From Macrostomum lignano (lineage: Eukaryota), in contig NIVC01003846.1 of the NCBI GenBank assembly GCA_002269645.1, positions 1 through 33,192 on the forward strand: a stretch of 33,192 nt of DNA. The letters run 5' to 3'. The notes under the pieces were generated by a model, which had not been told where the DNA came from, did no database searches, and saw nothing but the letters and a program-made list of their open reading frames with translations. The translations under genes and the position numbers were made by a program. Below are positions 2,771 through 25,941 of the stretch, piece after piece; position 1 is the stretch's first letter, and every line of letters starts with the position of its first letter.

Positions 2771-4324
2771 ATGCGCCGCATTTATATTGGCAACTTGTCA
2801 TCGCGCGCAACCAAGCGCGATATTGCTAAGTTTTTCCATCGCTACGGCCCGCTGGAGGATATCCTGCTGCGTGACGGCTTTGGCTTCGTACAGCTGAGCT
2901 CCTCAACTGACGCCGAAGATGCTGTTGACTATCTGAACGGCCGGGACCTGTGCGGCAGCCGGGTGTCGCTGGAGATGGCCAGGTCGGAGCGCCGTGGCGG
3001 CCGCGATCGCTATGGTCCGCCAACGCGCACCAGGTACCTACTTTTAGTAGTATTATAACTGTTTTTTTGCCCTGCCACAACCAGCGCTGAGTCAATTCTG
3101 TCAATTCTGCTGACTCCTAAGCATGTAGAAGGTGTGCCCCCATACACACGCCCATTCAGTGCGTACAGTGGCCCTGACTTATAATCGCCAGGCATGTACA
3201 CTGTGCCTTAGGGAGATTGGCCGAGCACAACCCCAAATTAATGTGTAGATACCATTGAATTGCTTCGCCCCTTATTAATTTATTAATTTGTCATAGAACC
3301 GTTCTCTTAAAAGTTCGGCAAGTTCCAATCTATGCAGTACCATATTAATTTGGAGACGGCCCCCAACCTGGCCGCTGTACACTTCGGGTATTGTCTCGCC
3401 GCTGGTTGCGGGCTTTTGTCGCCTTGATTTGCGGCAGCACTCATAGCGGCCCCTGCAGGTAATTAACTAACCTGAATGTAGAGCCACAGGCACGTAAAAC
3501 TCGCGGTTATCACGTAATAATCAATGCTGTACAAAGCGACGAAAAACCATGTTTTGAGTGATTTGAGTCAGGAAAAATGAGTGAAACCTAAATTGAAACT
3601 CAATACACTATAGCTTTCTTGAAACCTGTCGCAAATGCCCTGGGCCTTATTGACGTATTTATGTCGCTAAGAATACTGCAAAAATCGCCAATTCAGGCAC
3701 CGCCTGGTTGTCAAGAACCTGGGCTCCGACGTCAAGTGGCAGGACCTTAAAGACCTGGTTCGCCGCGCCGGCGAGGTCACCTTCGCTGACGTACACCGAC
3801 CTGTTCGAGGCGAAGGCATCGTTGAATTTGAGAGTCGTGACGATATGCGCCGGGCGCTGAAGCAGTACGACGGATTCGAGTGGCACGGCCGCCGGCTGCG
3901 CCTGTCTGTTGACGGCGCCGACGACTCGCGACGGTCGCGCCGGTCCCGGTCTAGGTCCCGGTCCAGGTCCAGGTCCCGATCTAGATCCCGTTCTCGCACC
4001 CGTTCTCGGTCGCGCTCGCGACGGTCCAAGTCCAGGTCCCGGTCTAGGGACCGCTCGAAGTCCCGGTCGGTGTCTAGGTCCCGGTCCCAGTCCCGATCAC
4101 GTTCTCGTTCCAGGTCGCGCTCGCCGATAAATAACAACGACAAGGCCAAAGCTAGGTCGGCGTCCCGGTCCAAGTCCAAGTCTCGGTCTCCGTCCCGCTC
4201 GCGCTCCAATTCCCCCGGGTCGCGCCGTTCCCGCAGCGGCTCGCCCGGCGCCCGACGCGACAATAACGGCGCCGCTGCCGAGCGCCGGTCCCGAAGCCGC
4301 AGCGACTCCAGAGGCTCGCGCTGA
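2771..4324 (+). CDS. SRSF4/5/6: SR-family splicing factor, SRSF4/5/6 (B52/SRp55) type, copy A, complete; exons 2771-3033 and 3697-4324, 296 aa
   Basis: Exon 1 encodes RRM1 (RNP2 IYIGNL, RNP1-like GFGFVQL) and the YGPPTRT linker. Phase-2 intron 3034-3696 (CAG|GTACCT ... TTCAG|G). Exon 2 reads HRLVVKNLGSDVKWQDLKDLVRRAGEVTFADVH...GEGIVEF (pseudo-RRM with the SWQDLKD-type motif), then a long RS domain ending at TGA 4322-4324. The spliced frame is continuous (891 nt). Confidence 0.95.
3085..3270 (-). mobile_element. Degenerate tRNA-derived SINE (family 1), antisense in SR intron; duplicated at ~15909-16094
   Basis: Shares ATTAATTTGGGG, AAGGCACAG, the GTGTACA-TG-CCTGGC/GTCAGG-GCCAC-TGTACGC hairpin and TCAGCGCTGGTT with copies at 7340-7568, 21845-22042 and 26690-26955. 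Boundaries approximate. Confidence 0.65.
3310..3395 (+). mobile_element. Internally deleted SINE family 1 fragment, inverted relative to the copy at 3085-3270
   Basis: GTTCCAATCTATGCAGTACCATATTAATTTGG resembles the family B-box/post-head segment (CTCGATTCCAAGTGCAGTCGCATTAATTTTTGG in the 7.5-kb copy) and is followed by GGCCGCTGTACAC, the hairpin 3' arm. Confidence 0.5.
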
Positions 4325-6689
4325 TGTGGCGGCTAACAATGACTATGGAGAGCGGCAGCGGATGGCGCGGGCTAATTGCAGACTCCTGGTGGGCCCAGAT
4401 TCGCCGCCTGCCAAGCCAGCTCCCAGTATGTTTAGCCATTGTTATTGCCTGTCCTGTTGTTTTCTCTGTTTATCAATTAAGTTCGGGCCTGTTAAAAATG
4501 CTTATTTATCTGTTGTCTCCCTGATATTTATTTTGTGGCTGTTGTGTGTTTTCTTGCTGTCGCTGCTGCTGCTGCTGTTTCTTTTTAAAATCGGGATTTT
4601 CTGTTTGAAATTTACGTAAAAAAGCAAACGGTTTTCAGTAGTTAGGAAAGCAAATCCATGTTGTGTCCGTGTTTTAGGCTATTCCAGCAGGAGCAGCGGC
4701 TTCGGTGTTTATCTGTTCCGTATTTTGCACACACAATAACATCTTACTGAACCGCCGATCGTCCCTGAAATGCAAATTTCTGCCGTGTTTTTACCAGCCT
4801 GTTGGGGGTATTTCAAATGCAGCACACCGAGCAAATAACGGGACATTAATTTAAACTCTGCTACGGTTCTCCTACTACAAGTAGTGTAAAATCATTAATT
4901 CCTCACTAGTTTGTCATTTCTGCTTGGTCAATTTGTTCTTTGATATTGTAAAGCTCGAAAAATGTTAATTAACTTTTTTATCAAAGTTTTTTATTGCTGG
5001 CCTCTTATAATTTCTATAACAACACTGAACGCAACCTAAATCCATCAGTCGATATGTGAGGAAGTGTCGACTGGCGATTCATAATTTCCTTTTTATTGAA
5101 CGTGTTAGAAACCACAAGTTCTCTGTAAACAAGCTGTCCCCCTGTTCAACACCTTTATGGGTTCGCTGACCAGTTATTTTTAATAGCAGACATACGTTAA
5201 TAATTAATAAGCTATCCGGGCAACTTAGTTGGCTAAGCTCCAACTGATATAATATTTTAATAGCATGCGCGTCATTAGCCTGCATTATTATTAATTGCTG
5301 CTTTATCTACGCAATAATTTCTTTGTTTCTCTCACTCTTTCTGTCCATTTTCGATCAGCCCCCGGGGCCAGCCGACCCGCCGGTCCCAGTGCTGTGAGAG
5401 GGAGCTGAGCTGATCCGGCGCTGCGCTGAGCTGAGCCAAACCAATGGTGCCTTGGTGCTACACACCATGCGGGCAGGCCTAAGGTGTCTACAATTAGCAG
5501 GCGGAGATCTACATGCAACCTGGGTAACCAGGGTGACTGCGTGCATTGTGCAGTGTGGTGTGTTTGTCTACTGATAGAACTGATTGCAAAGTGTCCGCAG
5601 CCTGAAAAGTACATAAAAAGTGGCAAAGCATTCAGTACAATTAGCATAGCATATAATACTATTAGTAACGCGTACCGCACCATTATTAATGCTGAAAACC
5701 CTAATTAGATAACGAAGAGCTGGCTTTTGAGATGAGAGATCGGCGATTGCTTTACCTCCGTTCGGTAAGATAGATTGAATTTAAATTCACGTCGAAATGA
5801 GAAATAATTTAATAACAAAGCAATTTGCAGCTTAACATAATGTAGATGTTTTGACGGCTTTAATACCTGGCTTAGCAAGTCCTCGTTTTGCACAATTTTG
5901 AATTCCGTACCATTTATTAAATGAAAGTAAAGAATTGCCGTGAAAGATACTTTTAGGTCGTAGCAACGTTTTAAAGTCTAAAATTTGATAGGTAAAAGAA
6001 TCTGTTGGGTTATGCTGTTGCTAAGTATATTGTTACGGTTGTCGAACTCCTAAAATCAACATTTAGAAGTCGGTGCGTTGCTCCGCGTAAAAAGAGAGCT
6101 ACATTTATTTTGTGCCCTGCAACTGTGCCAACTGACCCGAGGCTGCGAGTGCGACCCCGGGTTGCCTGCAGGGGCCGCAGACTAGAGGGTCAGTCGAGCT
6201 GTGAGGCCGTGTCTGTCTACTGTTGCTAATTAGTACAGGTAGATGACGTTGGATATGCGTAATTTACTGACAGTAGTATATGATCCAGCTGGGTAATATT
6301 GTAGATAGATGCTATTATTGCCGGAACAGGTGATGCTTGTGACGTAGTAATGAAGCACTGATTAGTTGGGCGTAGCTGTATACAGTAGGTGAACCTGGTC
6401 GCGGCTGAATGGAACCGAGAGAGCCCGGCAGTCTTCCGAAGGGGAATGTTCGGGGAATCTGGTTCAATTCGAGAGCGGCAATGGGACAACAGTGTCGCTC
6501 CCCGGCCGTTAGGACGAAACATTGGAAGCCGTATCGCGCCCGTTGCTACAAACGTAGAAGGCCAATTTGATTCTATTGTGAGTAGATTACCCGTGAAAAT
6601 GTGTTAAACCTCGTGTAAATATAAACAACCGCAATCACTTAAGTCTTGGGATGAGAACTGTAAGCGTCACAGGACGCGTCCCAATGCTA

Positions 6690-7075
6690 GCCAGTTGACG
6701 AAACGCCGAGTGCGCGCCTGTCTTCGCCGGCAGGGTGCCCGCCGAAGTCGCCGACAGTGCAACAGGTCGGTTGGGTGACCAATCTTGAAGCTGACAAGCA
6801 GCAGGCCAGCATGCGCCTCGTCCACCTGCTGTTCGAGCGAGTCTTCTCAGCGTCCAAGTCTTGGCCACGATGTGGAGTAACGCACCGCCTTCTGTCGGTC
6901 TGGTATGGCCTCTGACTGCAGGACCAACCTCACAGAAGGAAACGCAGTCCGCAGCCCAGGCAAGCCAGTAACGATGCCAGAGATTCTCGAAAGCGTCTAG
7001 GAAACAGCTACCGCCGAGGTAGACGAACTGCTGACATCGCGGAAGTTCCGTCGCCTGTCCGTCAGCGTCTGTATA
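6690..7075 (-). mobile_element. Decayed RTE-clade LINE fragment (region C-terminal to the RT core)
   Basis: Minus-strand frameshifted pieces ELPRCQQFVYLGG, WLAWAA, ALLHIVAKTWTL and LEQQVDEAHAGLL follow the RTE pattern F-x-YLG ... AWAA ... LLY-x-x-ETWTL ... LD-x-x-x-x-x-LLR (motif order recalled, not searched). Confidence 0.75.
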
Positions 7076-7339
7076 AGAAGCCTAGAATTCACTCCTTGAG
7101 GAAGCTTACACTGGCATCTCTCTTATTTGTAATTAGTACTTTCGACACACTAATAGAGTACTAGAAAAACAGTTTAATAGCACTGATTTATCTACTTATG
7201 ATGTACTTTTATGTTGTAATTGTAAGTTCTTTGCTGCAGACTGTTGTATGGGATATTTACTTGGGAATCTTTACCCCGGTGAGAGGCATTACTGCCCATT
7301 CCGCCGACTCCCCTGAGCAGGCGCACAAGCGCGTGGATA

Positions 7340-7568
7340 CGTACGCGATCATACGCGCAGGCACACACTCACACAGGAGTGTACAGCGGCCCTAACTTTA
7401 TTTATCATTAGGCATGTACACTTCACTGTGCCTTGGGTACTGGCCCTCAAGGCCGTTAATTGCACGAGCAGAGCCAAGCCGAAGTTCCAATTTAGCCCCA
7501 AAAATTAATGCGACTGCACTTGGAATCGAGCCTGGGCCGCTGGCACATGAGAGCTGCGCACTGGCTCT
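7340..7568 (-). mobile_element. tRNA-derived SINE family 1 (duplicated at ~18752-18980)
   Basis: Minus strand shows a partial tRNA-like head with B-box GGCTCGATTCC, then ATTAATTTTTGGGG and the conserved hairpin at 7379-7421. Confidence 0.7.
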
Positions 7569-7811
7569 GGGGGGGGGGGCACGGACCCCCTTTGTACAAT
7601 ATGAAATCTTACAATTAAGATTATTTTTTCCTTTCACGAGTAGACGTATATGGAGCAATTACTGAATTATTGTCTTAAAATAATTGGATTGTCAATATTG
7701 ACGCAAGATATAAATCGAGGATTAGCCGCAGCACTTATTGCGTGCAGATTTTTTCAGGCTCGGTCGCTTTTTATACGAAAAAAAGGTAGTTATATAGATA
7801 GATTTCGTGTT

Positions 7812-7825
7812 GTTACCATGGAAAC
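7812..7825. promoter_or_regulatory. RFX X-box-like palindrome GTTACCATGGAAAC (also 19224-19237)
   Basis: Matches the GTTNCC-AT-GGNAAC consensus; no transcription start can be assigned nearby. Confidence 0.25.
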
Positions 7826-9108
7826 TTAATCGTCTGATTTTGAATTTGAAATATAAGCTTAGTCGCGCAGATTCTGTTGGCGCTTATTTTTATGTTATAA
7901 TAGTGAAAATTTGACACCTATGAAAAAATTTATGGCTAGTCTTTTTATTGCTTTACGTGTCTGGGTATACAAAGCTATATATACACTACAACGAACGGTG
8001 TCAGCGAACGGGCAATACAGCAATAAAAAGCTAATGAATGAAAAAAATCCCGACATCATGACAGTTAAATAAAGTTTCGTACCCAAATTATTCTAGCTAT
8101 TTTTTGGTATCAATATATGAAGCCTAACTCGGTTGTATTCTGGCTTGTAGTCTTTGATGTATTTTACTTGAATTTCCATTTTATCTCCATCTTCTTGAGT
8201 CGTTAGGTAAAGCACTTTCTTCTGACCGGTCCCCTAGCGTTTAGATATGAAATCCCAGGCGCAACCGCACAAACAAAACAAAGGAAACTAAATAGGTTTA
8301 ATTACGATCGCCGTATTTTTCTGCAGTAAAGAAATTGCATATTGATATTAAGTCTGCGTTCTAAATTCTATTCATGTACGTTGCGGACGTGCCGAAAGTC
8401 AAGTCTATTTTGCTGTGCAAAGTCAACACAGACTGTCAACGGACAATTGTCATTTTCTTACTAGGTGATTTTTCACAGCATTTTGGTTTAAACTTTGTCT
8501 TAAATAAAAACCAAGGCTCCCAGCTGGACTCCCAAGATACTCAGAAAACTTCACGAGCATGCTCTCGAATATTTTTACGAGCTATCTCATCCAATGACAT
8601 CGGATTTTTGTGCATGGATCGTGTCCCTGAATCCAACATCGTTAAGCCTTTCGCATGCCTATATAAGTGACGGCTACAGCGCTACAGATACTTTGAAGTT
8701 CAACTGTATCGAGTGGCACAGTTAAATCATCTGATTCTTTTCTTCTGATGAAAGTCTGACACATCTGTAAAAGTTTATTGGGTCAGGTTGCTAACCTGTA
8801 CTTCTAGGTAAAAAATCACAATAACGGTGGCGCTATATAAAATAATACGACTCTAAACAATCTTAATCTTGGATAAAAGGAATAAATATTAAATATGTAG
8901 GCTATCTACTAATTGTATATCAGATCTGCAATATGATGCGCCAATGACGGCAGTCTCTGGACTGCTCTTAAGCTAGTGCATAGTCCGGTACTTTCACGAG
9001 CGCATGCGAGACTAGATGCACTGTGCGGAAAGGAGTGGCAGGATGTCCGGTTGGAAAACTGTGGGAGATTTTTAACAGCGCATGCGCAATAGCGCAACAA
9101 ATTAAAAG

Positions 9109-9825
<717 letters not shown>

Positions 9826-9919
9826 TCAGAGTACACAGTTATCAAGTCAAGATGGCAGTCCATCTGCAGCGAGCGAGGAGGCAAAGCAGTTGTGCCCATC
9901 TACTAACTACTGGATATGT

Positions 9920-10593
9920 GTACATGTACACAGGCAAACACTGAAGAATGTACATTTACACAGGCAAACACTGAAGAATGTACATGTACACAAGCAAACA
10001 CTGAAGAATGTACATGTACACAGGCAAACACTGAAGAATGTACATGTACACAGGCAAACACTGAAGAATGTACATGTACACAGGCAAACACTGAAGAATG
10101 TACATGTACACAGGCAAACACTGAAGAATGTACATGTACACAGGCAAACACTGAAGAATGTACATGTACACAGGCAAACACTGAAGAATGTACATGTACA
10201 CAGGCAAACACTGAAGAATGTACATGTACACAAGCAAACACTGAAGAATGTACATGTACACAGGCAAACACTGAAGAATGTACATGTACACAAGCAAACA
10301 CTGAAGAATGTACATGTGCACAGGCAAACACTGAAGAATGTACATGTACACAGGCAAACACTGAAGAATGTACATGTACACAGGCAAACACTGAAGAATG
10401 TACATGTACACAAGCAAACACTGAAGAATGTACATGTGCACAGGCAAACACTGAAGAATGTACATGTACACAGGCAAACACTGAAGAATGTACATGTACA
10501 CAGGCAAACACTGAAGAATGTACATGTACACAAGCAAACACTGAAGAATGTACATGTGCACAGGCAAACACTGAAGAATGTACATGTACACAG
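9920..10593. repeat. 30-bp minisatellite GTACATGTACACAGGCAAACACTGAAGAAT, ~22.5 copies
   Basis: Head-to-tail exact 30-nt period with a few single-base variants; no spacers. Confidence 0.98.
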
Positions 10594-10646
10594 TAGGCAC
10601 ACATATTGAGGATATAACTTTACAACTGCGCTGACTTTCTCATTGT

Positions 10647-11663
10647 CAGGCGTCGTAGAACCTCTCTATCCGGTCCTCGGGTCTTTTGAAATTTCACAAT
10701 AGCAATCCGGTCCGGTCCGCTCAGGGTTTGCGTCTTCACAGCTCTCTTCTCTAATTTCCTCTCCTCTCTTCTCTTCTCCTCTCCTCTCTTCTTCTTTCCT
10801 CTCCTCTCCTTCTTTCCTCTCCTCTCCTCTCTCTTCTCCTCTCCTCTCCTCTCTTCTCCTCTCCTCTCCTCTCTTCTCCTCTCCTCTCTCCTCTCTTCTC
10901 CTCTCTTCTCTCTTTTCCTCTCCTCTCTCCTCTCTTCTCCTCTCCTCTCTTCTCTCTTCTCCTCTCTTCTCTCTTCTCCTCTCCTCTCTCCTCTCTTCTC
11001 CTCTCCTCTCTTCTCCTCTCCTCTCTTCTCTCTTCTCCTCTTCTCTCTTCTCCTCTCCTCTCTTCTCTCTTCTCCTCTCTTCTCCTCTCTCCTCTTCGCT
11101 CTTCTCCTCTTCCCTTCCTCTCCTCTTCTTTCCTCTCCTCTCCTCTCTTCTCCTCTCCTCTCTTCTCTCTTCTCCTCTCCTCTCTTCTCTCTTCTCCTCT
11201 CCTCTCTCCTCTCTTCTCCTCTCCTCTCTTCTCTCTTCTCCTCTCCTCTCTTCTCTCTTCTCCTCTCCTCTCTCCTCTCTTCTCCTCTCCTCTCTTCTCC
11301 TCTCTTCTCTCTTCTCCTCTTCTCCTCTCCTCTCTTCTCTCTTCTCCTCTTCTCTCTTCTCCTCTCCTCTCTTCTCTCTTCTCCTCTCTTCTCCTCTCTC
11401 CTCTTCGCTCTTCTCCTCTCCCCTCCTCTCCTCTTCTTTCCTCTCATATTCTTTCCTCTCCTTTCCTTTCCTCTCCTCGCCCTCCTCTTCTATCTCATCT
11501 CTTCTCTCCTCTCGTCTCGTCACTTTTCGCCTCGCCTTGCCTCTCCCTTATCGCCTCTCTTGTTTCCTATCTCTCATCTCTCTTCTCTCTCCTCTCCTCT
11601 AACTCTCAGTGATGCACTAGGTTTTCTATCTGACCCTTTAGATAAAAAGTTCGCCGACCCCTG
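10647..11663. mobile_element. Non-autonomous hAT (Charlie/Buster-like) DNA transposon remnant filled by a pyrimidine microsatellite
   Basis: Right end 11641-11663 (revcomp CAGGGGTCGGCGAACTTTTTATC) is a typical hAT TIR and is followed by ATCTAGAC, which fits the NTCTAGAN Charlie/Buster target preference. Left end 10647-10670 CAGGCGTCGTAGAACCTCTCTATC matches it at about 18/24 positions. No TSD on the left. Confidence 0.55.
10743..11600. repeat. ~860-bp polypyrimidine microsatellite built from CTCCT/CTCTT pentamers
   Basis: Almost exclusively C/T on the + strand; the E/R/K/G ORFs on the - strand are by-products. Confidence 0.97.
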
Positions 11664-12726
11664 ATCTAGACTTTAGTAGGGAATCATTCGTACAAGATGA
11701 TCGTATATGCATAATCCATAGCGATGTCACTACAGGTTCAGACTAGAGCGCTTGGAGAATAAAAAAAGAGTTTGTTTGCTTCAACAAACTACTAAGAGCG
11801 GCAAAGTATGCAGAACAGACAAAAAACCGCACATTTTAAGCTAGCAAAACGTTTTATACGACTGTATATAAAAGTACTAATTGTCAAAGAAATCACCCCA
11901 GCTTAATTTGGGCCAAGCTGACACAGAGGGCGGGGCTGACTGCGCAATAAGTGTAATTAGGTAATAATAATTAACAATTTATTAACTTGTTATATTAAAT
12001 GTGTAGTCGTTAAAGCGGCTTACACAATGCGCACGGTGTACACAGACAAACAGATAGTGACTGTACTGAAGTGCAAGTTTATGTACACAATTATAATGTA
12101 AGATATATATCATCAATGCAAGATTAAATAAATGTAAATTAGCTGCTTTTGTAAGAGAGACAGACATGATTACAGAGGCCCGCGGACGGGGCCCACAAGG
12201 AGCAGGACACAGACGGCATCTTAAAATTGCCGCCATTTGACTAATCAAATGATTAAAACAAGGTCAAATCTGCTACACAAGCAAAGATATTTGGTAGAAA
12301 TGAAACATTTTCAAAAGCAGGAGATTAGTAAGTAAAACAGAGGAAAGGAGCAAACTCAGGAAAAAATCGGCTTTCTATGCTTGAATTCTTTGCGGACGTG
12401 TGCGGCTAAAAAAATTCCGATCGGATAATTTTGCAACAAATTTAAAAACAGACAACAACACACAAAACTGCCGCTTCGGATCGAAATTGCTGGTGCGTCA
12501 GTGAAACAAGATGATCATTTAATAAGATATTAAAATTATTAAATGTTTATAGAATTAATCAGGAAACTGTCAGCCATGATTATTTAATAAAATTTGTTAA
12601 TAACAACAGAGAAAATCGTACACTTGGATAGATTACAACGCGGAAACAAATAATTATATTAACTATAATTAACACAAACAACACAGCATATACTCGTATG
12701 ATTGAATCTAATTAAGAAGCTGGGCT

Positions 12727-12765
12727 GAGAGGGAGATAGAGATGAAGAGAGGATAGAGAGAGGAA

Positions 12766-12813
<48 letters not shown>

Positions 12814-12816
12814 GGA

Positions 12817-12862
<46 letters not shown>

Positions 12863-12902
12863 GGATGTGTGTGTGTGGAGAGAGAGAGAGAAGGGGGTGT
12901 GT

Positions 12903-12939
<37 letters not shown>

Positions 12940-12942
12940 GGA

Positions 12943-12979
<37 letters not shown>

Positions 12980-12982
12980 TGT
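12727..12982. repeat. Compound (GT)n(GA)n microsatellite in ~5 blocks separated by AAGGGGA
   Basis: Seen directly; lies 3' of the HMG20-like stop codon on the - strand. Confidence 0.95.
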
Positions 12983-13150
12983 GAGAGAATGAGACAAGAA
13001 CGGGAAGAAGACCTGTGCACTTTCAAATCGTGGCAGAAAGCTTTCAAGTGACTGCAACATGAGTGACACAAAGGACTAATCCAGTGACCATATTCGAATT
13101 TTGCCACGACTTGAATTAGCAACACTTCATCACCCTGTCTCAGCCTAGCC

Positions 13151-13463
13151 TCAGGTGGGCAGAATCAGCGAGCGAACCAGTTCTTGCAGATTAGCCAGCA
13201 CATCCGGCCTGACGGAGCTCAGAGCTGGCAGCACCCGGTCAATCTGAGCTTGCAAATCCGGCACAAAGTTCTGCGCCAAGCCCTGCTGCCTGTAGGCCGC
13301 CTGAACGTCAGTCATTCTGGCGCGCAATTGTCGGACAGATTCTTCCGCCGCTCGCAGTCGGTCTTCTGATCCGGCGTTAAAATCTTCCGCTATGCGTTGA
13401 ATGCTGGCTGCCAAATCTGCTGTGCTGACGGCCTTGCTATTCTGCATGTGCTGCTGCTGCTGT

Positions 13464-13513
<50 letters not shown>

Positions 13514-13585
13514 ATGAAGCTGTTGAGAAGGCTGTTGCTGTTGCTGCTGTTGCTGAATCTGCGTCGACATGTGCTGCTGTTGCTG

Positions 13586-13616
<31 letters not shown>

Positions 13617-15350
13617 GGCTGAGCCGACTGTACAAGCTCCTGGAAGCTGGACAGAGACTGTCCACCAACTGAGGCCACCTGAGCGAGGCCGGGCATAGGA
13701 CCCTGGGTGACAGCTAGCAGAGCCACTGTGCCAGGCGGCAGGCCAGGCAGATTCTGGAGCTGCATCAGCTGCTGACCAGCCGGCATGAGCAGCTGCTGGC
13801 CTTGCCCGCCCGGCCCGCCCGCCATCAGCATCTGCTGGCAAATATAGGGGGGTGATGGAGCTCAGAGCCACTGCTTGAAATCCGAATTCACCGATTCAAT
13901 AGAGACCAGAGCTCACTGGCACATTGGAAATCTCACTCTATCTGGACTGGCACATTGGAAATCTCACTCTATCTGGACTGGCACATTGGAAATCTCACTG
14001 TCTGGACTGGCACATTGGAAATCTCACTCTATCTGGACTGGCACATTGGAAATCTCACTCTATCTGGACTGGCACATTGGAAATCTCACTCTATCTGGAC
14101 TGGCACATTGGAAATCTCACTCTATCTGGACTGGCACATTGGAAATCTCACTCTATATCTGGACTGGCACATTGGAAATCTCACTCCCGAGCATATCAAA
14201 TTAAGCACAGAATTTCGAGCTCACCTGTTGCTGCCCGCCCGCCGGAACCAGGAACTGCTGCTGTCCAGTATTCAGCCCGGACAGCTGGCTGGCTGGTACC
14301 AGCACCTGTTGCTGACCGCTGGCAGACACCAGCACCTGCTGCTGACCGCTAGCTGGTACTAACACCTGTTGCTGACCACTAGCGGGCACTAGCATCTGCT
14401 GCTGACCTCCGGCAGACACCAGCATCTGTTGATGACCACTAGCAGGCACGAGCATCTGTTGCTGACCGCTAGCGGGCACCAGCACCTGTTGCTGACCGCT
14501 AGCGGGCACCAGCACCTGTTGTTGAGCTCCAGCCGGTAGTAGCATCTGCTGCTGACCAGCCGGTACCAACAGCTGCTGGTGGCCCACTGTAGTCGGGACC
14601 AGCAGCTGCTGCTGAAGTGACTGTTGCTGCTGCTGCTGCGGTTGCTGCTGGTTCACAACAACAGACCCGGCCGCTTGGCTATTATTGAGAATGGATGACT
14701 CGTCCTCAGTTGATTTCCGGACGCCAGCAGTAGCGGCCGGCGCAGTCGCCGCCGCCCCCGCCGCAGCGGCGCCGCCCGGACGAGCTCCGGCGCCGCTTCC
14801 CGCGCCGCTGCCAGCGCCGGAACCAGTTTTGGCTCTCTTAGCCGGACTTGGTGCCGACGTAGACGGATGATTGCTAGCCGACCGTTGCGCGTCCAACGCT
14901 TTGAGCTTCTCTTGAAAGGCCCGGTGCGCTTCGGTCTGCTTGTAGGCTGACAGCTCCTGCTCATAGGCGGCGAACGCTTTGGTATAGAGCTGCTGGTAGC
15001 GCTGCTTCTCATCCGCTGACAGGTCGCGCCACTGCTGCGCTACCACTTTAATCTGGTCGCGACCTTTCAGCTTCAGTTCCGGCGTGTCTTTAATATGCGC
15101 GCCTAGCTGCTCCATTTTCTCTTTGACAAATACGGTGTAGGCCGACCGGGGATTCACCGGCTCCTGGGGATCGCGGCGCGCCTGCCGGGACCGGCGCCCG
15201 GTGCCAGCCGGCTTGCGCGGCTTTGCCGGCCTCGGCGGCGTCACCGAGGACGCATCGCCGCCGCCGGCCGCCGCTGCGGCGTCGGCCGCTGCCGCGGCCG
15301 CCCGCGTCGTCACGTCTTCGATTATGCGTGAGAGCGACACTTTGACGGCG
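13151..15350 (-). CDS. HMG20: HMG-box protein, HMG20A/B (BRAF35/iBRAF)-like, with Q-rich repeats; exons ~15350(uncertain)-14225 and 13834-13151; native 5' end not visible
   Basis: HMG box PVNPRSAYTVFVKE...AQQWRDLSADEKQRYQQ...YEQELSAYKQTEAHR; the post-box YxxELxAYxQSEA pattern is HMG20-like. C-terminal helical region EDFNAGSEDRLRAAEESVRQL...LQELVRSL. Phase-0 intron 13835-14224 (CAG|GTGAGC ... TTTGCCAG|CAG), stop TGA 13151-13153. The open frame continues through the 40-bp repeat to an ATG at 15664. Confidence 0.8.
13915..14185. repeat. 31-bp intronic minisatellite ACTGGCACATTGGAAATCTCACTCTATCTGG, ~9 copies
   Basis: Tandem units (one 29-nt and one 33-nt variant) occupying most of the HMG20-like intron. 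Confidence 0.97.
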
Positions 15351-15413
15351 GGTGGGCTGCGCGCTGGCGGCGGGCGGTTCGGGACGGCGAGACAGTGTAA
15401 ATATTCGAAATTC

Positions 15414-15615
15414 GGGGCATCTTGAGGCACTGCAGTGTTCTGCGAATCCCAATGGGGCATCTTGAGGCACTGGAGTGTTCTGCGAATCCCAATGGGATAT
15501 CTTGAGGCACTGGAGTGTTCTGCGAATCCCAATGGGGCATCTTGAGGCACTGGAGTGTTCTGCGAATCCCAATGGGATATCTTGAGGCACTGGAGTGTTC
15601 TGGGAATCCCAATGG
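15414..15615. repeat. 40-bp minisatellite CTTGAGGCACTGGAGTGTTCTGCGAATCCCAATGGG(GC/AT)AT, ~5 copies, alternating variants
   Basis: Units start at 15421, 15461, 15501, 15541 and 15581; the last unit is cut at AATGG and fused to SR exon 1. Confidence 0.97.
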
Positions 15616-17148
15616 CAACTTGTCGTCGCGCGCAACCAAGCGCGATATTGCTAAGTTTTTCCATCGCTACGGCCCGCTGGAGGATATCCTGCTGCGTGAC
15701 GGCTTTGGCTTCGTACAGCTGAGCTCCTCAACTGACGCCGAAGATGCTGTTGACTATCTGAACGGCCGGGACCTGTGCGGCAGCCGGGTGTCGCTGGAGA
15801 TGGCCAGGTCGGAGCGCCGTGGCGGCCGCGATCGCTATGGTCCGCCAACGCGCACCAGGTACCTACTTTTAGTAGTATTATAACTGTTTTTTGCCCTGCC
15901 ACAACCAGCGCTGAGTCAATTCTGTCAATTCTGCTGACTCCTAAGCATGTAGAAGGTGTGCCCCCATACACACGCCCATTCAGTGCGTACAGTGGCCCTG
16001 ACTTATAATCGCCAGGCATGTACACTGTGCCTTAGGGAGATTGGCCGAGCACAACCCCAAATTAATGTGTAGATACCATTGAATTGCTCCGCCCCTTATT
16101 AATTTATTAATTTGTCATAGAACCGTTCTCTTAAAAGTTCGGCAAGTTCCAATCTATGCAGTTCCATATTAATTTGGAGACGGCCCCCAACCTGGCCGCT
16201 GTACACTTCGGGCATTGTCTCGTCGCTAATTGCGGGCTTTTGTCGCCTTGATTTGCGGCAGCACTCATAGCGGCCCCTGCAGGTAATTAACTAACCTGAA
16301 TGTAGAGCCACAGGCACGTAAAACTCGCGGTTATCACGTAATAATCAATGCTGTACAAAGCGACGAAAAACCATGTTTTGAGTGATTTGAGTCAGGAAAA
16401 ATGAGTGAAACCTAAATTGAAACTCAATACACTATAGCTTTCTTGAAACCTGTCGCAAATGCCCTGGGCCTTATTGACGTATTTATGTCGCTAAGAATAC
16501 TGCAAAAATCGCCAATTCAGGCACCGCCTGGTTGTCAAGAACCTGGGCTCCGACGTCAAGTGGCAGGACCTTAAAGACCTGGTTCGCCGCGCCGGCGAGG
16601 TCACCTTCGCTGACGTACACCGACCTGTTCGAGGCGAAGGCATCGTTGAATTTGAGAGTCGTGACGATATGCGCCGGGCGCTGAAGCAGTACGACGGATT
16701 CGAGTGGCACGGCCGCCGGCTGCGCCTGTCTGTTGACGGCGCCGACGACTCGCGACGGTCGCGCCGGTCCCGGTCTAGGTCCCGGTCCAGGTCCAGGTCC
16801 CGATCTAGATCCCGTTCTCGCACCCGTTCTCGGTCGCGCTCGCGCCGGTCCAAGTCCAGGTCCCGGTCTAGGGACCGCTCGAAGTCCCGGTCGGTGTCTA
16901 GGTCCCGGTCCCAGTCCCGATCACGTTCTCGTTCCAGGTCGCGCTCGCCGATAAATAACAACGACAAGGCCAAGGCTAGGTCGGCGTCCCGGTCCAAGTC
17001 CAAGTCTCGGTCTCCGTCCCGCTCGCGCTCCAATTCCCCCGGGTCGCGCCGTTCCCGCAGCGGCTCGCCCGGCGCCCGACGCGACAATAACGGCGCCGCT
17101 GCCGAGCGCCGGTCCCGAAGCCGCAGCGACTCCAGAGGCTCGCGCTGA
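15572..17148 (+). CDS. SRSF4/5/6: SRSF4/5/6-type SR protein copy B, native start lost; possible chimeric ORF from repeat-derived ATG 15572; exons 15572-15858 and 16521-17148 (304 aa), or pseudogene
   Basis: Homology to copy A begins at 15613, so the first 17 coding nt are missing. In-frame ATG in the minisatellite gives MGYLEALECSGNPNGNLSSRATKR. Splice sites and stop are intact. The three coding differences I found are synonymous. Confidence 0.7.
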
Positions 17149-18109
17149 TGTGGCGGCTAACAATGACTATGGAGAGCGGCAGCGGATGGCCCGGGCTAAT
17201 TGCAGACTCCTGGTGGGCCCAGATTCGCCGCCTGCCAAGCCAGCTCCCAGTATGTTTAGCCATTGTTATTGCCTGTCCTATTGTTTTCTCTGTTTATCAA
17301 TTAAGTTCGGGCCTGTTAAAAATTCTTATTTATCCGTTGTGTCTCCCTGATATTTATTTTGTGGCTGTTGTGTGTTTTCTTGCTGTCGCTGCTGCTGCTG
17401 CTGTTTCTTTTTAAAATCGGAATTTTCTGTTAGAAATTTACGTAAAAAAGCAAACGGTTTTCAGTAGTTAGGAAAGCAAATCCATGTTGTGTCCGTGTTT
17501 TAGGCTATTCCAGCAGGAGCAGCGGCTTCGGTGTTTATCTGTTCCGTATTTTGCACACACAATAACATCTTACTGAACCGCCGATCGTCCCTGAAATGCA
17601 AATTTCTGCCGTGTTTTTACCAGCCTGTTGGGGGTATTTCAAATGCAGCACACCGAGCAAATAACGGGACATTAATTTAAACTCTGCTACGGTTCTCCTA
17701 CTACAAGTAGTGTAAAATCATTAATTCCTCACTAGTTTGTCATTTCTGCTTGGTCAATTTGTTCTTTGATATTGTAAAGCTCGAAAAATGTTAATTAACT
17801 TTTTTATCAAAGTTTTTTATTGCTGGCCTCTTACGAGCATAATTTCTATAACAACACTGAACGCAACCTAAATCCATCAGTCGATATGTGAGGAAGTGTC
17901 GACTGGCGATTCATAATTTCCTTTTTATTGACCGTGTTAGAAACCACAAGTTCTCTGTAAACAAGCTGTCCCCCTGTTCAACACCTTTATGGGTTCGCTG
18001 ACCAGTTATTTTTAATAGCAAACATACCTTAATAATTAATAAGCTATCCGGGCAACTTAGTTGGCTAAGCTCCAACTGATATAATATTTTACTGGACGCG
18101 TCCCAATGC

Positions 18110-18485
18110 TAGCAGTCGACGAAACGCCGAGTGCGCGCCTGTCTTCGCCGGCAGGGTGCCCGCCGACAGTGCAACAGGTCGGTTGAGTGACCAATCTTAA
18201 GGCTGACAAGCAGCAGGCCAGCATGCGCCTCGTCCACCTGCTGTTCGAGCGAGTCTTCTCAGCGTCCAAGTCTTGGCCACGATGTGGAGTAACGCACCGC
18301 CTTCTGTCGGTCTGGTATGGCCTCTGACTGCAGGACCAACCTCACAGAAGGAAACGCAGTCCGCAGCCCAGGCAAGCCAGTAACGATGCCAGAGATTCTC
18401 GAAAGCGTCTAGGAAACAGCTACCGCCGAGGTAGACGAACTGCTGACATCGCGGAAGTTCCGTCGCCTGTCCGTCAGCGTCTGTA
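18110..18485 (-). mobile_element. Duplicate of the decayed RTE LINE fragment
   Basis: Near-identical to 6690-7075. Confidence 0.72.
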
Positions 18486-20315
18486 TAAGAAGCCTAGAAT
18501 TCACTCCTTAAGGAAGCTTACACTGGCATCTCTCTTATTTGTAGTTAATACTTTCGACACACTAATAGAGTACTAGAAAAACAGTTTAATAGCACTGATT
18601 TATCGACTTATGATGTACTTTTATGTTGTAATTGTGAGTTCTTTGCTGCAGACTGTTGTATGGGATATTTACTTGGGAATCTTTACCCCGGTGAGAGGCA
18701 TTACTGCCCATTCCGCCGACTCCCCTGAGCAGGCGCACAAGCGCGTGGATACGTACGCGATCATACGCACAGGCACACACTCACACAGGAGTGTACAGCG
18801 GCCCTAACTTTATTTATCATTAGGCATGTACACTTCACTGTGCCTTGGGTACTGGCCCTCAAGGCCGTTAATTGCACGAGCAGAGCCAAGCCGAAGTTCC
18901 AATTTAGCCCCAAAAATTAATGCGACTGCACTTGGAATCGAGCCCGGGCCGCTGGCACATGAGAGCTGCGCACTGGCTCTGGGGGGGGGGGCACGGACCC
19001 CCTTTGTACAATATGAAATCTTACAATTAAGATTATTTTTTCCTTTCACGAGTAGACGTATATGGAGCAATTACTGAATTATTGCCTTAAAATAATTGGA
19101 TTGTCAATATTGACGCAAGATATAAATCGAGGATTAGCCGCAGCACTTATTGCGTGCAGATTTTTTCAGGCTCGGTCGCTTTTTATACGAAAAAAAGGTA
19201 GTTATATAGATAGATTTCGTGTTGTTACCATGGAAACTTAATCGTCTGATTTTGAATTTGAAATATAAGCTTAGTCGCTCAGATTCTGTTGGCGCTTATT
19301 TTTATGTTATGATAGTGAAGTGAGCTCCGCGAATTTGACACCTATGAAAAAATTTATGGCTAGTCTTTTTAATGCTTTACGTGTCTGGGTATACAAAACT
19401 ATATATACACTACAAGGTGCTGCGAACGGGCAATACAGCAATAAAAAGCTAATGAATATGAAATCCCAGGCGCAACCGCACAAACAAAACAAAGGAAACT
19501 AAATAGGTTTAATTACGATCGCCGTATTTTTCTGCAGTAAAGAAATTGCATATTGATATTAAGTCTGCGTTCTAAATTCTATTCATGTACGTTGCGGACG
19601 TGCCGAAAGTCAAGTCTATTTTGCTGTGCAAAGTCAACACAGACTGTAAACGGACTTGTCGTCTTCTTACTAGGTGATTTTTCATAGCATTTGGTTTAAA
19701 CTTTGTCTTAAATAAAAACCAAGGCTCCCAGCTAGACTCCCAAGATACTCAGAAAACTTCACGTGCATGCTCTCGAATATTTTTACCAGCTATCTCATCC
19801 AATGACATCGGATTTTTGTGCATGGATCGTGTCCCTGAATCCAACATCGTTAAGCCTTTCGCATGCCTATATAAGTGACGGCTACAGCGCTACAGATACT
19901 TTCAAGTTCAACTGTATCGAGTGGCACAGTTAAATCATCTGATTCTTTTCTTCTGATGAAAGTCTGACACATCTGTAAAAGTTTATTGGTCAGGTTGCTA
20001 ACCTGTACTTCTAGGTAAAAAATCACAATAACGGTGGCGCTATATAAAAAAATACGACTATAAACAATCTTAATCTTGGATAAAAGGAATAAATATTAAA
20101 TATGTAGGCTATCTACTAATTGTATATCAGATCTGCAATATGATGCGCCAATGACGGCAGTCTCTGGACTGCTCTTAAGCTAGTGCATAGTCCGGTACTT
20201 TCACGAGCGCATGCGAGACTAGATGCACTGTGCGGAAAGGAGTGGCAGGATGTCCGGTTGGAAAACTGTGGGAGATTTTTAACAGCGCATGCGCAATAGC
20301 GCAACAAATTAAAAG

Positions 20316-24857
<4,542 letters not shown>

Positions 24858-25053
24858 GACCCCCTTGCGACAGCGTCTCAAGCTATAAAAATGCCCGTCC
24901 TCTTAGCCAAGCACAATGAGCCTGCGCATAGCTTGTAAAAGCATTGCTGTTCAAAATTTGTTTGCCTATCGGAGGGTTGTAGGATGTTTTTTTGCGAGCG
25001 TTTCCACAAAGCCACTAAAATGTTATTCATTTCCGGGGGGGGGGGGTTGTGCT

Positions 25054-25270
25054 TTCATATATCTGACACTTTATGTCTCCGAAACTTCAACTCCGCGAAA
25101 CTTCATATATCCGACTTTTCATATCTCCGACACTTCTTAGCTCTGACACTTCATATCTCCGACACTTCATATCTCCGACACTTCATATCTCCGACACTTC
25201 ATATCTCCGAAACTTCCTATCTCCGACACTTCCTATCTCTGACTTTTCATATCTCCGACACTTGATATCT
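25054..25270. repeat. 16-bp degenerate minisatellite CTCCGACACTTCATAT, ~13 copies
   Basis: Seen directly. Confidence 0.93.
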
Positions 25271-25290
25271 ACGAGTATCGCTAAGGTTTA

Positions 25291-25941
25291 AGTGACTAAA
25301 TCCAGAACCGAGACTCTCAGAGTCAAATTTGAGTGACTAAATCCAGAACCGAGACTCTCAGAGTCAAATTTGAGTGACTAAATCCAGAACCGGAACTCTC
25401 AGGGTCAAATTTGAGTGACTAAATCCAGAACCGGGACTCTCAGAGTCAAATTTGAGTGACTAAATCCAGAACCGAGACTCTCAGAGTCAAATTTGAGTGA
25501 CTAAATCCAGAACCGGAACTCTCAGGGTCAAATTTGAGTGACTAAATCCAGAACCGGGACTCTCAGAGTCAAATTTGAGTGACTAAATCCAGAACCGGAA
25601 CTCTCAGGGTCAAATTTGAGTGACTAAATCCAGAACCGGGACTCTCAGAGTCAAATTTGAGTGACTAAATCCAGAACCGAGACTCTCAGAGTCAAATTTG
25701 AGTGACTAAATCCAGAACCGGGACTCTCAGGGTCAAATTTGAGTGACTAAATCCAGAACCGGGACTCTCAGAGTCAAATTTGAGTGACTAAATCCAGAAC
25801 CGGGACTCTCAGAGTCAAATTTGAGTGACTAAATCCAGAACCGGAACTCTCAGGGTCAAATTTGAGTGACTAAATCCAGAACCGGAACTCTCAGGGTCAA
25901 ATTTGAGTGACTAAATCCAGAACCGGGACTCTCAGAGTCAA
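25291..25941. repeat. 41-bp minisatellite GAGTGACTAAATCCAGAACCGAGACTCTCAGAGTCAAATTT, ~16 copies
   Basis: Exact 41-nt period with variation limited to CCG(AG/GA/GG)ACT and CAG(A/G)GTC. Confidence 0.98.

What the first reader, a model, noticed from the sequence alone, without database searches (positions are those of the whole stretch)
10647..15615. 4.96-kb foreign insert carrying an HMG20-like gene, flanked by a ~7.9/6.3-kb direct duplication, with a hAT TIR exactly at the left junction
Seen: architecture D-insert-D'. Copy A keeps the 5' end of the SR gene and copy B keeps the 5' exons of gene X, so the ancestral locus was a single SR-to-X convergent pair. The left junction overlaps a hAT-like TIR (CAGGCGT in the shared SINE sequence vs CAGGGGT in the TIR, 6/7 microhomology). 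The element's right end retains a Charlie-type ATCTAGAC flank with no matching left TSD. The right junction has TGG microhomology between a minisatellite and SR exon 1. Inference: one-ended or alternative hAT transposition, or microhomology-mediated template switching, moved a chromatin-regulator gene fragment and duplicated a splicing-factor gene in one event.
Basis: partly seen in the sequence, partly recalled or inferred. Interest (0 to 1): 0.7.

Follow-up and report, generated by a model that had tools for sequence, protein, structure and literature searches.

The report
Tandem duplication with captured HMG-box gene
In one of the three near-identical genome copies of the flatworm Macrostomum lignano, a 7.9-kb stretch was duplicated in tandem and a 5-kb piece of foreign DNA carrying an HMG-box gene was copied in between; this is a known, fairly ordinary kind of complex rearrangement, and a hAT transposon role is not supported.

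Summary
The window is the whole contig NIVC01003846.1 of the M. lignano Mlig_3_7 assembly. D (2788-10653) and D' (15613-21890) are direct copies that differ by 0.9% substitutions. They flank a 4,959-bp insert (10654-15612).

Two paralogous loci from the same assembly, L004 and L005, show the unrearranged state. They have one copy of D, no insert and an uninterrupted SINE-like repeat at the left breakpoint. L004 also has an intact SR exon 1. D and D' are each other's closest relatives, so the event is specific to this copy and younger than its split from L004.

The insert carries the whole known coding region, with an intact intron, of a divergent and unannotated paralog of Mlig011149. It is an HMG-box gene, not a fragment, and "HMG20-like" is not shown.

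The right junction shows TGG microhomology. It also appears in a UniProt gene model that probably comes from the older ML2 assembly.

The "hAT TIR" is a 12/15 match that is not better than chance. There is no target-site duplication, no other copy in about 110 kb, and no element at the ancestral breakpoints.

Best reading: a "cycle of templated insertion", meaning replicative template switching or end-joining capture. An assembly artefact is unlikely but is not excluded without reads. Interest is low to moderate.

The parts
1..2787 (.). Left flank U with the SR upstream region. It is single copy in the window and collinear with paralogous locus L004.
   Evidence: 98.7% identity to L004 22297-19512.
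2788..10653 (+). D (copy A) of the duplicated segment, 7,866 bp. It retains the ancestral length.
   Evidence: It is collinear with L004, including the 1409-bp and 205-bp stretches that D' lacks.
2771..4324 (+). Intact SRSF4/5/6-type SR gene. Exons are 2771-3033 and 3697-4324, encoding RRM1, a pseudo-RRM and an RS domain.
   Evidence: Pfam RRM_1; splice sites and translation; 100% match to the aligned parts of UniProt A0A1I8G929; annotated as a 304-aa gene on the contig.
9109..9798 (-). Orphan copy of exon 3 (the last exon) of gene X (Mlig000727). It carries a copy-A-specific N-to-D change. The GenBank model of X nevertheless uses this copy.
   Evidence: The gene range 9342-24084 in L003 equals window 9109-23851.
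9919..10593 (.). 30-bp minisatellite in X intron 2, copy A (22.5 units).
10647..10653 (+). CAGGCGT, the last 7 nt shared by D and D'. It is native SINE-like sequence. The left breakpoint is 10653|10654.
10654..15612 (.). Insert of 4,959 bp. It is absent from paralogous loci L004 and L005 and unrelated to the rest of the window.
10647..11664 (.). Its status is unproven.
   Evidence: Ends are CAGGCGTCGTAGAAC and rc CAGGGGTCGGCGAAC (12/15). Local alignment scores 18, p about 0.03 in pre-chosen windows, and is not significant in an unbiased scan. Flanks are CTCATTGT and ATCTAGAC, so there is no TSD. No other copy was found.
11665..13150 (.). AT-rich spacer and GA/GT microsatellite (about 12720-12990). 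This is the 3' flank of the HMG gene.
13151..13834 (-). HMG-box gene, last exon (Q-rich region plus conserved C-terminal domain; stop codon at 13151-13153).
   Evidence: tblastn to P0123 residues 301-447; acceptor ...tttgccag|CAG ATG.
13835..14224 (-). Canonical GT...AG intron of the HMG gene, holding a 31-bp minisatellite (13915-14186).
   Evidence: The reading frame is kept across the splice.
14225..15364 (-). HMG-box gene, upstream coding exon. The HMG box is at about 14939-15154. An in-frame 30-bp coding repeat lies at 14298-14557. The ORF stays open upstream as far as 15664.
   Evidence: Pfam HMG_box; 58% aa and 75% nt identity to Mlig011149g1/g2.
15414..15615 (.). 40-bp minisatellite (5.1 units) directly 5' of the HMG coding region. 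The right breakpoint lies inside it, at 15612|15613, and TGG (15613-15615) is shared with SR exon 1.
   Evidence: The Mlig011149 loci also have a minisatellite, with a different unit, at the same relative place.
15613..21890 (+). D' (copy B) of the duplicated segment, 6,278 bp. It carries two later deletions, equivalent to A 5260-6668 and 8040-8244.
15613..17148 (+). SR' gene copy lacking the first 6 codons (MRRIYI, most of RNP2). Exons are 15613-15858 and 16521-17148. The frame stays open into the minisatellite, which has an in-frame ATG.
   Evidence: UniProt A0A1I8IM76 starts ALECSGNPNG|NLSS..., which is the translation of 15587 onward.
20316..23851 (-). Contiguous gene X (Mlig000727g2). Exon 1 is 23159-23851, exon 2 is 22088-22165, and exon 3 (copy B) is 20316-21005. 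The left breakpoint equivalent (21890) is in intron 2, 198 nt from exon 2.
   Evidence: P0125 sequence against window ORFs. In L004 and L005 the gene is 3.2 kb long.
21840..22035 (-). SINE-like repeat with a box-B-like GGTTCGATTCC motif. It is intact in D' and cut after CAGGCGT in D.
   Evidence: ARAGORN and Rfam find no tRNA, so 'SINE' rests on the motif and a second copy at about 26700-26950.

Best explanation
This is a real rearrangement specific to one of the three paralogous copies (subgenomes) of the Macrostomum lignano genome. It is a tandem duplication of a 7.9-kb segment, running from codon 6 of an SRSF4/5/6-type gene to intron 2 of the convergent gene Mlig000727. A 4,959-bp stretch from another locus is copied between the two repeats. 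Cancer genomics calls this a 'cycle of templated insertion'; human CNV work calls it FoSTeS/MMBIR.

Most likely course (inferred): a broken or stalled replication end in the SINE-like repeat of X intron 2 switched to a distant template. That template was the 3' flank and body of an HMG-box gene, a paralog of Mlig011149. Synthesis ran about 5 kb up to the minisatellite in front of that gene, then switched back through a TGG microhomology to SR exon 1, 7.9 kb behind the starting point, and re-replicated that segment. End-joining capture of a 5-kb fragment between sister chromatids would give the same product.

Consequences (shown): one intact SR gene and one contiguous X gene remain. There is an orphan X exon 3, an SR copy without its first six codons, and a relocated intron-containing HMG-box gene lying head to head with the truncated SR copy across a 40-bp minisatellite. 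D' later lost 1,409 bp and 205 bp. No transposase step is needed.
For: Architecture and junctions.

The window is contig NIVC01003846.1 of Mlig_3_7.

Empty site: L004 (NIVC01004366.1) is collinear with window 1-10653 plus 21891-33192 at 97-98%. L004 and L005 read ...CATTGTCAGGCGTGTGTCAGC... without interruption, and L004 has the intact SR start. Gene X is 3.2 kb in both, against 14.7 kb as annotated here.

D and D' are sisters: 61 sites have A=B differing from L004, against 30 A-only and 18 B-only, out of 5,448. With four sequences the pattern aabb occurs 7 times, abba once and abab never. D-D' divergence is 0.9%, against about 1.5-1.7% to L004. Published subgenome divergence is 1.4-2.4% (PMC10733133).

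The insert is foreign to the locus, with no similarity to L004, L005 or the rest of the window. It is genuine M. lignano-type gene sequence, covering P0123 residues 13-447 with a GT-AG intron.

Both junctions share only 3-7 nt, too little for an overlap-based assembler to create them. The right junction is reproduced in UniProt A0A1I8IM76. That accession series differs from the one that carries the Mlig_3_7 BOX15 names and, to my knowledge, comes from the ML2 assembly.

The same structure class is described in PMC7025897.
Against: - The donor locus was not found, so it is not shown that the insert is a copy rather than a relocation. Microhomology at the left junction cannot be measured.
- No reads were available.
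- The contig is only 33 kb.
- PMC10733133 reports that most four-copy blocks in Mlig_3_7 have three-fold read depth, so over-representation errors are common in this assembly.
- ML2 and Mlig_3_7 were built from the same PacBio data. The second sighting of the right junction is therefore independent of the assembler but not of the reads.
- The GenBank model of X uses the copy-A exon 3 rather than the nearer copy-B exon. This is odd if the contig structure is what is transcribed.
- A 3-nt microhomology alone occurs by chance in roughly 5% of random joins.
Confidence: 0.68

Rival explanations
1. Assembly artefact. The contig is a chimera in which Canu ran from one haplovariant into another through the shared 5-kb segment, or D and D' are an over-represented single locus.
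For: The contig is small, in an assembly with N50 of 215 kb. The assembly is known to over-represent paralogs: most four-copy blocks have three-fold depth. D is present four times here (D, D', L004 and part of L005). The gene model for X links exon 2 to copy A.
Against: D and D' differ at 50 of 5,496 aligned sites and by two deletions after Pilon polishing, so they are not one sequence assembled twice. They are sisters relative to L004 and L005, so neither is a stray copy of those loci. Both junctions join unrelated sequences with 3-7 nt of overlap and must exist in reads. A chimera would need two separate rearranged chromosomes that both carry the same 4.96-kb piece with complementary ends. 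The right junction also appears in a gene model that probably comes from another assembly.
Confidence: 0.12
2. The event depended on a hAT transposon. Either alternative or one-ended transposition, or a transposase-cut end of a hAT-type element at the donor locus, was joined to the break in X intron 2. That would explain why the insert starts exactly at a TIR.
For: The right end of the putative element reads CAGGGGT... and is followed by ATCTAGAC. From my own knowledge, this fits the hAT terminal pattern YARNG and the target pattern nTnnnnAn. The left junction sequence matches it 12/15 in inverted orientation, starting at the very first base.
Against: The match is not better than chance when the junction is scanned against the whole insert. 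7 of the 12 matching bases belong to the native SINE. There is no TSD (CTCATTGT against ATCTAGAC). No other copy occurs in about 110 kb of M. lignano DNA. No transposase is seen. The ancestral-type loci have no element at either breakpoint. The right junction lies in a minisatellite and an exon, not at a transposon end. Ac-type duplications have a transposon at the start of each repeat and a shared 8-bp TSD (PMC3744419).
Confidence: 0.08
3. Two separate events. Either a plain tandem duplication was followed by an insertion at its junction, or an insertion into X intron 2 was followed by a second join to SR exon 1.
For: The two junctions cannot be dated separately. M. lignano paralogous loci differ by many large indels. 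L005 and D' show further independent rearrangements at this same locus.
Against: A later insertion would have to land exactly at the duplication junction, within one base in about 7 kb, without loss or gain of host sequence. The one-event model needs only two joins.
Confidence: 0.1

Closest known systems
Cycles of templated insertions (Li et al. 2020, Nature; PMC7025897)
   Same: A string of DNA copied from a distant locus returns to the host chromosome behind its point of departure. A host segment is thereby re-replicated, giving host copy, insert, host copy, with two novel junctions. The size scale is kilobases, and whole genes or gene parts are juxtaposed.
   Different: Those are somatic events in human tumours, recognised by copy-number gain at the donor. 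Here the event is germline and old (0.9% divergence) in a flatworm, and the donor has not been located.
FoSTeS/MMBIR complex duplications and insertions in human germline CNVs (own knowledge; PMC5120786 listed)
   Same: Direct duplication with inserted sequence at the join, short microhomology (TGG) at the junction, and breakpoints in or next to repeats (a SINE-like repeat and a minisatellite).
   Different: Microhomology could be read at one junction only. A non-replicative end-joining capture cannot be told apart from sequence alone.
Tandem direct duplications by reversed-ends transposition of maize Ac/Ds and dhAT elements (PMC3744419)
   Same: Two direct repeats with a candidate hAT-type end at the join, and one flank without a matching TSD.
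   Different: In the maize cases each repeat begins precisely with the transposon, elements pre-exist at the locus, and the junctions share an 8-bp TSD. None of this holds here.
Large-indel divergence between the three M. lignano subgenomes (PMC10733133)
   Same: Three paralogous copies at about 1-2.5% SNP divergence that differ mainly by kilobase-scale indels and rearrangements. The window, L004 and L005 fit this picture.
   Different: That study gives genome-wide statistics. This is one event resolved to the base, with its ancestral state.

Membership tests
Tandem duplication with templated insertion ('cycle of templated insertion', FoSTeS/MMBIR class) | Two direct copies of one contiguous host segment flank the inserted DNA. 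| tested here: met
   2788-10653 and 15613-21890 are collinear and direct, with 0.9% substitutions.
Tandem duplication with templated insertion ('cycle of templated insertion', FoSTeS/MMBIR class) | The progenitor state has a single copy and no insert. | tested here: met
   L004 is collinear with window 1-10653 plus 21891-33192. The breakpoint sequences are uninterrupted in L004 and L005.
Tandem duplication with templated insertion ('cycle of templated insertion', FoSTeS/MMBIR class) | The insert is a copy of another genomic locus, and the donor is retained. | not testable with these tools
   No flatworm genome can be searched by DNA. The insert's ORFs are not on record as called genes. Only the 58%-identical paralogs Mlig011149g1/g2 were found.
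Tandem duplication with templated insertion ('cycle of templated insertion', FoSTeS/MMBIR class) | Junctions are blunt or have a few bases of microhomology, with no long homology. | tested here: inconclusive
   Right junction: TGG is shared between the minisatellite unit and SR exon 1. Left junction: the donor sequence is unknown, so microhomology cannot be read. There is no long homology at either junction.
hAT alternative (reversed-ends) transposition duplication, Ac/Ds type | Transposon copies pre-exist at the locus, and each repeat starts precisely at a transposon end. | tested here: not met
   There is no element at 2787/2788 or 21890/21891, and none at the equivalent sites of L004 and L005. 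The criterion is from PMC3744419.
hAT alternative (reversed-ends) transposition duplication, Ac/Ds type | The new junctions carry an 8-bp target-site duplication. | tested here: not met
   The flanks are CTCATTGT and ATCTAGAC. The right junction lies in a minisatellite and an exon.
hAT-superfamily non-autonomous element (10647-11664) | Terminal inverted repeats. | tested here: inconclusive
   12/15, or 19/25 with one gap. This is not above chance in an unbiased scan. 7 of the matching bases are native SINE sequence.
hAT-superfamily non-autonomous element (10647-11664) | 8-bp target-site duplication. | tested here: not met
   CTCATTGT against ATCTAGAC.
hAT-superfamily non-autonomous element (10647-11664) | Multiple copies in the genome with the same ends. 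| not testable with these tools
   No second copy occurs in the window, L001, L002, L004 or L005, about 110 kb in total. The whole genome could not be searched.
HMG20A/B (BRAF35/iBRAF) subfamily | A single HMG box. | tested here: met
   PF00505, E=7e-9, one box.
HMG20A/B (BRAF35/iBRAF) subfamily | Closest relatives outside the species are HMG20 proteins. | tested here: inconclusive
   The word-seeded protein search returned only the M. lignano paralog. The best solved structures are HMGB1 and TFAM, with SMARCE1 weaker and no HMG20 entry.
HMG20A/B (BRAF35/iBRAF) subfamily | A coiled coil C-terminal to the box. | not tested
   A conserved C-terminal domain shared with Mlig011149 exists, but its fold was not examined.
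SRSF4/5/6-type SR proteins | RRM1, a pseudo-RRM with a (S/K)WQDLKD motif, and a C-terminal RS domain. | tested here: met
   RRM_1 hit; KWQDLKD and RS repeats in the translation; best named hits are SRSF4, SRSF5 and SRSF6.

The most novel reading that the evidence does not exclude
A transposase-cut end of a hAT-type element at the donor locus seeded the event. The free element end, with the HMG gene behind it, was joined by the imperfect CAGG(C/G)GT microhomology to a broken fork in X intron 2 and was then copied back into SR exon 1. In this reading a DNA transposon started a templated-insertion cycle without transposing. The product would be a head-to-head pair of new chimeric genes (the HMG paralog and the N-terminally replaced SR') that share a 40-bp minisatellite as their common 5' region.
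Probability: 0.07. Interest if true: 0.5.

Novelty: new member of a known kind. Interest (0 to 1): 0.25.

Why it matters
This is a base-resolved example, with its ancestral state in hand, of how the three young subgenomes of the neopolyploid M. lignano diverge. One event relocated an intact HMG-box gene, made a truncated splicing-factor copy and an orphan exon, and produced a gene model with a 12.3-kb false-looking intron.

It is useful for curating the Mlig_3_7 annotation and for designing knock-outs or RNAi against these genes. It also adds a germline, evolutionary instance of the 'templated insertion cycle' best known from tumours. It does not reveal a new mechanism.

Tried and rejected
- **ORFs across the junctions:** I looked up ORFs 14201-15664 and 13151-13831 to find other assemblies carrying them. 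Neither is on record.
- **UniProt SR proteins:** the look-up has no contig on record for them.
- **Spliced SR protein:** I tried a look-up of the spliced 304-aa protein to reach further paralogous loci.
- **X exon 1:** the word-seeded protein search found nothing. The HMMER library search with exon 3 then found P0125.
- **Different species:** I first took the 58% HMG hit to mean another Macrostomum species. I dropped this when the SR protein matched M. lignano exactly and the contig itself was retrieved.
- **Retrocopy origin of the HMG gene:** rejected, because it has a canonical 390-nt intron. One intron of Mlig011149 is absent here, and this one is absent there.
- **A-only segments as insertions:** the 1409-bp and 205-bp segments are present in L004, so they are deletions in D'.
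- **tRNA origin of the SINE-like repeat:** ARAGORN and Rfam found nothing.
- **Literature search for the terminal sequence:** it returned only unrelated primers.
- **Bacterial promoter/terminator scan:** irrelevant for this eukaryote.

Full report
**What the window is.** The SR protein encoded at 2771-4324 is identical, over all aligned parts, to Macrostomum lignano UniProt entry A0A1I8G929. A look-up of protein P0125 returned a 33,192-bp contig, NIVC01003846.1 of assembly Mlig_3_7 (GCA_002269645.1), whose gene positions map exactly onto the window in reverse. The window is therefore a whole small contig of that Canu/PacBio assembly of the inbred DV1 line. It has no N runs.

**Check of the observation.**
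- Self-BLAST gives three collinear direct blocks: 2788-5259 = 15613-18091, 6669-8039 = 18091-19457, and 8245-10653 = 19456-21890. D is 7,866 bp and D' is 6,278 bp.
- The difference in length comes from two stretches present only in D (5260-6668 and 8040-8244) and one extra 30-bp minisatellite unit in D'.
- Substitution divergence is 50 of 5,496 sites, or 0.91%.
- Left junction: D and D' read identically up to ...CATTGTCAGGCGT, then D continues CGTAGAACC... and D' continues GTGTCAGC....
- Right junction: the 40-bp minisatellite ...GGGAATCCCAA runs into TGGCAACTTGTC. In D the preceding bases are ATGCGCCGCATTTATAT. D' therefore starts 17 nt after the SR start codon, and TGG is shared with the expected next bases of the minisatellite unit.

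**Genes.**
- *SR gene.* It has two exons (2771-3033 and 3697-4324) encoding RRM1, a pseudo-RRM with KWQDLKD, and an RS domain. Its best named relatives are SRSF4/5/6.
- *SR' in D'.* It lacks MRRIYI, which is most of the RNP2 strand. It reads ...NPN|GNLSS instead, with the frame open into the minisatellite.
- *Gene X.* This is BOX15_Mlig000727g2. Protein P0125 (486 aa) shows three exons: 23159-23851, 22088-22165, and a last exon that exists twice, at 9109-9798 in D and at 20316-21005 in D'. Exons 1 and 2 lie to the right of D'. This confirms that only copy B is contiguous with the 5' exons.
- *HMG-box gene in the insert.* It lies on the minus strand and carries a single HMG box. tblastn with its paralog P0123 (Mlig011149g2, 448 aa, 5'-partial) aligns residues 13-447. 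The two coding blocks are joined by a canonical GT...AG intron of 390 nt that keeps the frame.
- *Nature of the HMG gene.* The insert holds the entire known coding region of an intron-containing gene, not a fragment and not a retrocopy. It is only 58% identical in protein, and 75% in DNA over the box, to Mlig011149g1/g2. It is an old paralog, not a copy of those loci. No identical protein is annotated.
- *"HMG20-like".* This could not be confirmed. The best solved structures are HMGB1 and TFAM boxes.

**The ancestral state.**
- The 90% cluster of P0125 contains P0126 (Mlig000727g1 and g4) on two other contigs. Their loci, L004 and L005, have gene X in 3.2 kb, against 14.7 kb as annotated here.
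- L004 is collinear with window 1-10653 and then directly with 21891-33192. It has the SR gene 4.8 kb from X in convergent orientation and no trace of the insert.
- At the left breakpoint, L004 and L005 read ...CTTTCTCATTGTCAGGCGTGTGTCAGCATCCC..., the same as D'. At the right breakpoint, L004 has the intact ...CAGCTATGCGCCGCATTTATATTGGCAAC....
- This is the empty site.
- The 1,409-bp and 205-bp stretches are present in L004, and the latter also in L005, so they are deletions in D'.
- L005 loses all similarity at the equivalent of window 7961, which is a further independent rearrangement.

**Timing and relationship.**
- In three-way alignments, 61 sites have D = D' differing from L004, 30 are private to D, and 18 are private to D'.
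- With L005 added, the informative patterns are aabb 7, abba 1 and abab 0.
- D and D' are therefore sister sequences. The duplication arose in this copy after it diverged from the other two, at roughly half that depth (0.9% against about 1.5-1.7%).
- Published estimates for the three DV1 subgenomes are 1.4-2.4% (PMC10733133).

**Is it an artefact?** I could not look at reads, so this stays open.

Arguments against an artefact:
- D and D' differ by 50 substitutions and two deletions after polishing.
- Neither is a stray copy of L004 or L005.
- Each junction joins unrelated sequence with only 3-7 shared bases, which an overlap assembler cannot invent.
- UniProt A0A1I8IM76 begins ALECSGNPNG|NLSSRATK..., exactly the translation of 15587 onward across the right junction. 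That accession series differs from the A0A267 series carrying the Mlig_3_7 BOX15 names. To my knowledge it derives from the ML2 assembly, which used another assembler on the same PacBio reads.

Arguments for caution:
- The contig is short.
- Mlig_3_7 is known to over-represent paralogs.
- The GenBank model of X joins exon 2 to the far copy of exon 3.

I put the artefact at about 0.12.

**The hAT claim.**
- The right end of the proposed element reads, on the reverse strand, CAGGGGTCGGCGAAC, followed by ATCTAGAC. The left junction reads CAGGCGTCGTAGAAC, a 12/15 match, or 19/25 with one gap.
- 7 of the 12 matching bases are native SINE sequence present in D', L004, L005 and a second repeat copy.
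- In windows chosen around the two ends the alignment has p of about 0.03.
- When the junction 37-mer is scanned against the reverse complement of the whole insert, a better match lies elsewhere. 28% of random 37-mers from the window score at least 20, above the proposed pair's 18.
- The flanks CTCATTGT and ATCTAGAC do not match. No second copy of either end occurs in about 110 kb of M. lignano DNA.
- The ancestral-type loci have no element at either breakpoint. The right junction is not at a transposon end.
- Ac-type reversed-ends duplications have a transposon at the start of each repeat and a shared 8-bp TSD (PMC3744419). These features were tested and are not met.
- CAGGG fits the hAT terminal pattern and ATCTAGAC fits nTnnnnAn. 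That is recalled knowledge and only a lead.

**Mechanism.**
- Shown: two novel joins turn U-[a..b]-R into U-[a..b]-insert-[a..b]-R.
- This is the structure called a cycle of templated insertion: inserted segments return to the host chromosome and re-replicate a host segment (PMC7025897). It is the kind of product expected from FoSTeS/MMBIR template switching.
- Inferred: a replication end broken in the SINE-like repeat of X intron 2 invaded the region 3' of the HMG paralog. It copied 4,959 bp up to the minisatellite that precedes that gene. It then switched back through TGG to SR exon 1.
- Both breakpoints on the insert side lie at repeats: a CT-rich tract with the candidate element end on one side, and the 40-bp minisatellite on the other. 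The Mlig011149 loci also carry a minisatellite in the same position in front of the coding region.
- End-joining capture of a free 5-kb fragment would look the same. A two-step history is possible but needs an exact coincidence of sites.

**Comparison and novelty.** The event belongs to a known class of complex duplication. It occurs in a genome where kilobase-scale differences between subgenomes are the rule. What is new is only the instance, with its progenitor state. I rate it a new member of a known kind with interest 0.25. The one reading that would raise interest is a transposase-cut element end seeding the event and a new bidirectional chimeric gene pair. It has little support, and I put it at about 0.07.

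Noticed in passing
window 9109-23851 (minus strand): The GenBank gene model BOX15_Mlig000727g2 joins exon 2 (22088-22165) to the far copy of exon 3 (9109-9798, with its private N-to-D change). It skips the nearer copy at 20316-21005. Its 'intron' of about 12.3 kb therefore contains SR', the HMG-box gene and a complete spare exon. This is probably an annotation artefact of multi-mapping.
   Followed up: partly
window 13151-15364 (minus strand): The HMG-box gene in the insert is structurally intact (two coding blocks, canonical intron, no stops). It is not annotated on the contig, and no identical protein exists in the searched collections. It contains an in-frame 30-bp coding repeat (QQQVLVPASG-like, 14298-14557) and a long polyglutamine tract.
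   Followed up: partly
window 15414-15664, both strands: Both reading frames that cross the right junction stay open. The HMG ORF runs through the 40-bp minisatellite to an ATG at 15664, inside antisense SR' exon 1. The SR' frame has an in-frame ATG inside the minisatellite. The two genes lie head to head across the repeat.
   Followed up: no
L002 9793-9950 and window 15414-15615: Both the Mlig011149 loci and the paralog in the insert have a minisatellite, with unrelated units of about 32 bp and 40 bp, directly upstream of the homologous coding start. The known protein models of Mlig011149 are 5'-partial and have no ATG before the HMG box.
   Followed up: no
L005 14333 onward (equivalent to window 7961): The third paralogous locus loses all similarity to the window and to L004 about 1.1 kb beyond the end of gene X. 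No SR gene occurs within the next 8.9 kb. This is another independent rearrangement or large insertion at the same locus.
   Followed up: partly
window 5260-6668 and 8040-8244 (absent from D'): There are two deletions in D' relative to D and L004. The 205-bp deletion is bounded by a short direct repeat (TGAAA). The 1,409-bp deletion has a 3-nt filler (CTG) and no repeat.
   Followed up: yes
window 27959-28259 and 30515-30809: This is an inverted pair of a roughly 300-bp repeat (91% identical). The repeat is also present in the Mlig011149 loci (L001 14931-15336 and L002 14976-15382, 82-90% identical), so it is a dispersed repeat family.
   Followed up: no
window 9919-10593, 13915-14186, 21126-21830, 25287-25941, 28944-29365, 30056-30352: Minisatellites are unusually dense, with units of 30, 31, 41, 47 and 29 bp, most at 95-98% unit identity. 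The 30-bp array has 22.5 and 23.5 units in D and D', but only about 13 in L004.
   Followed up: no
window 31759-33178 (minus strand): This is the 3' part of a NACHT/WD40 (NWD2-type) gene. Two long ORFs overlap in different frames at 32253-32334, so there is either a short intron or a frameshift there.
   Followed up: no
L001 vs L002: The two Mlig011149 loci are 98.4-99.6% identical over 16 kb. In L001 the coding region has a frame break before the C-terminal domain (the model ends ...PMCCP), which L002 lacks.
   Followed up: no
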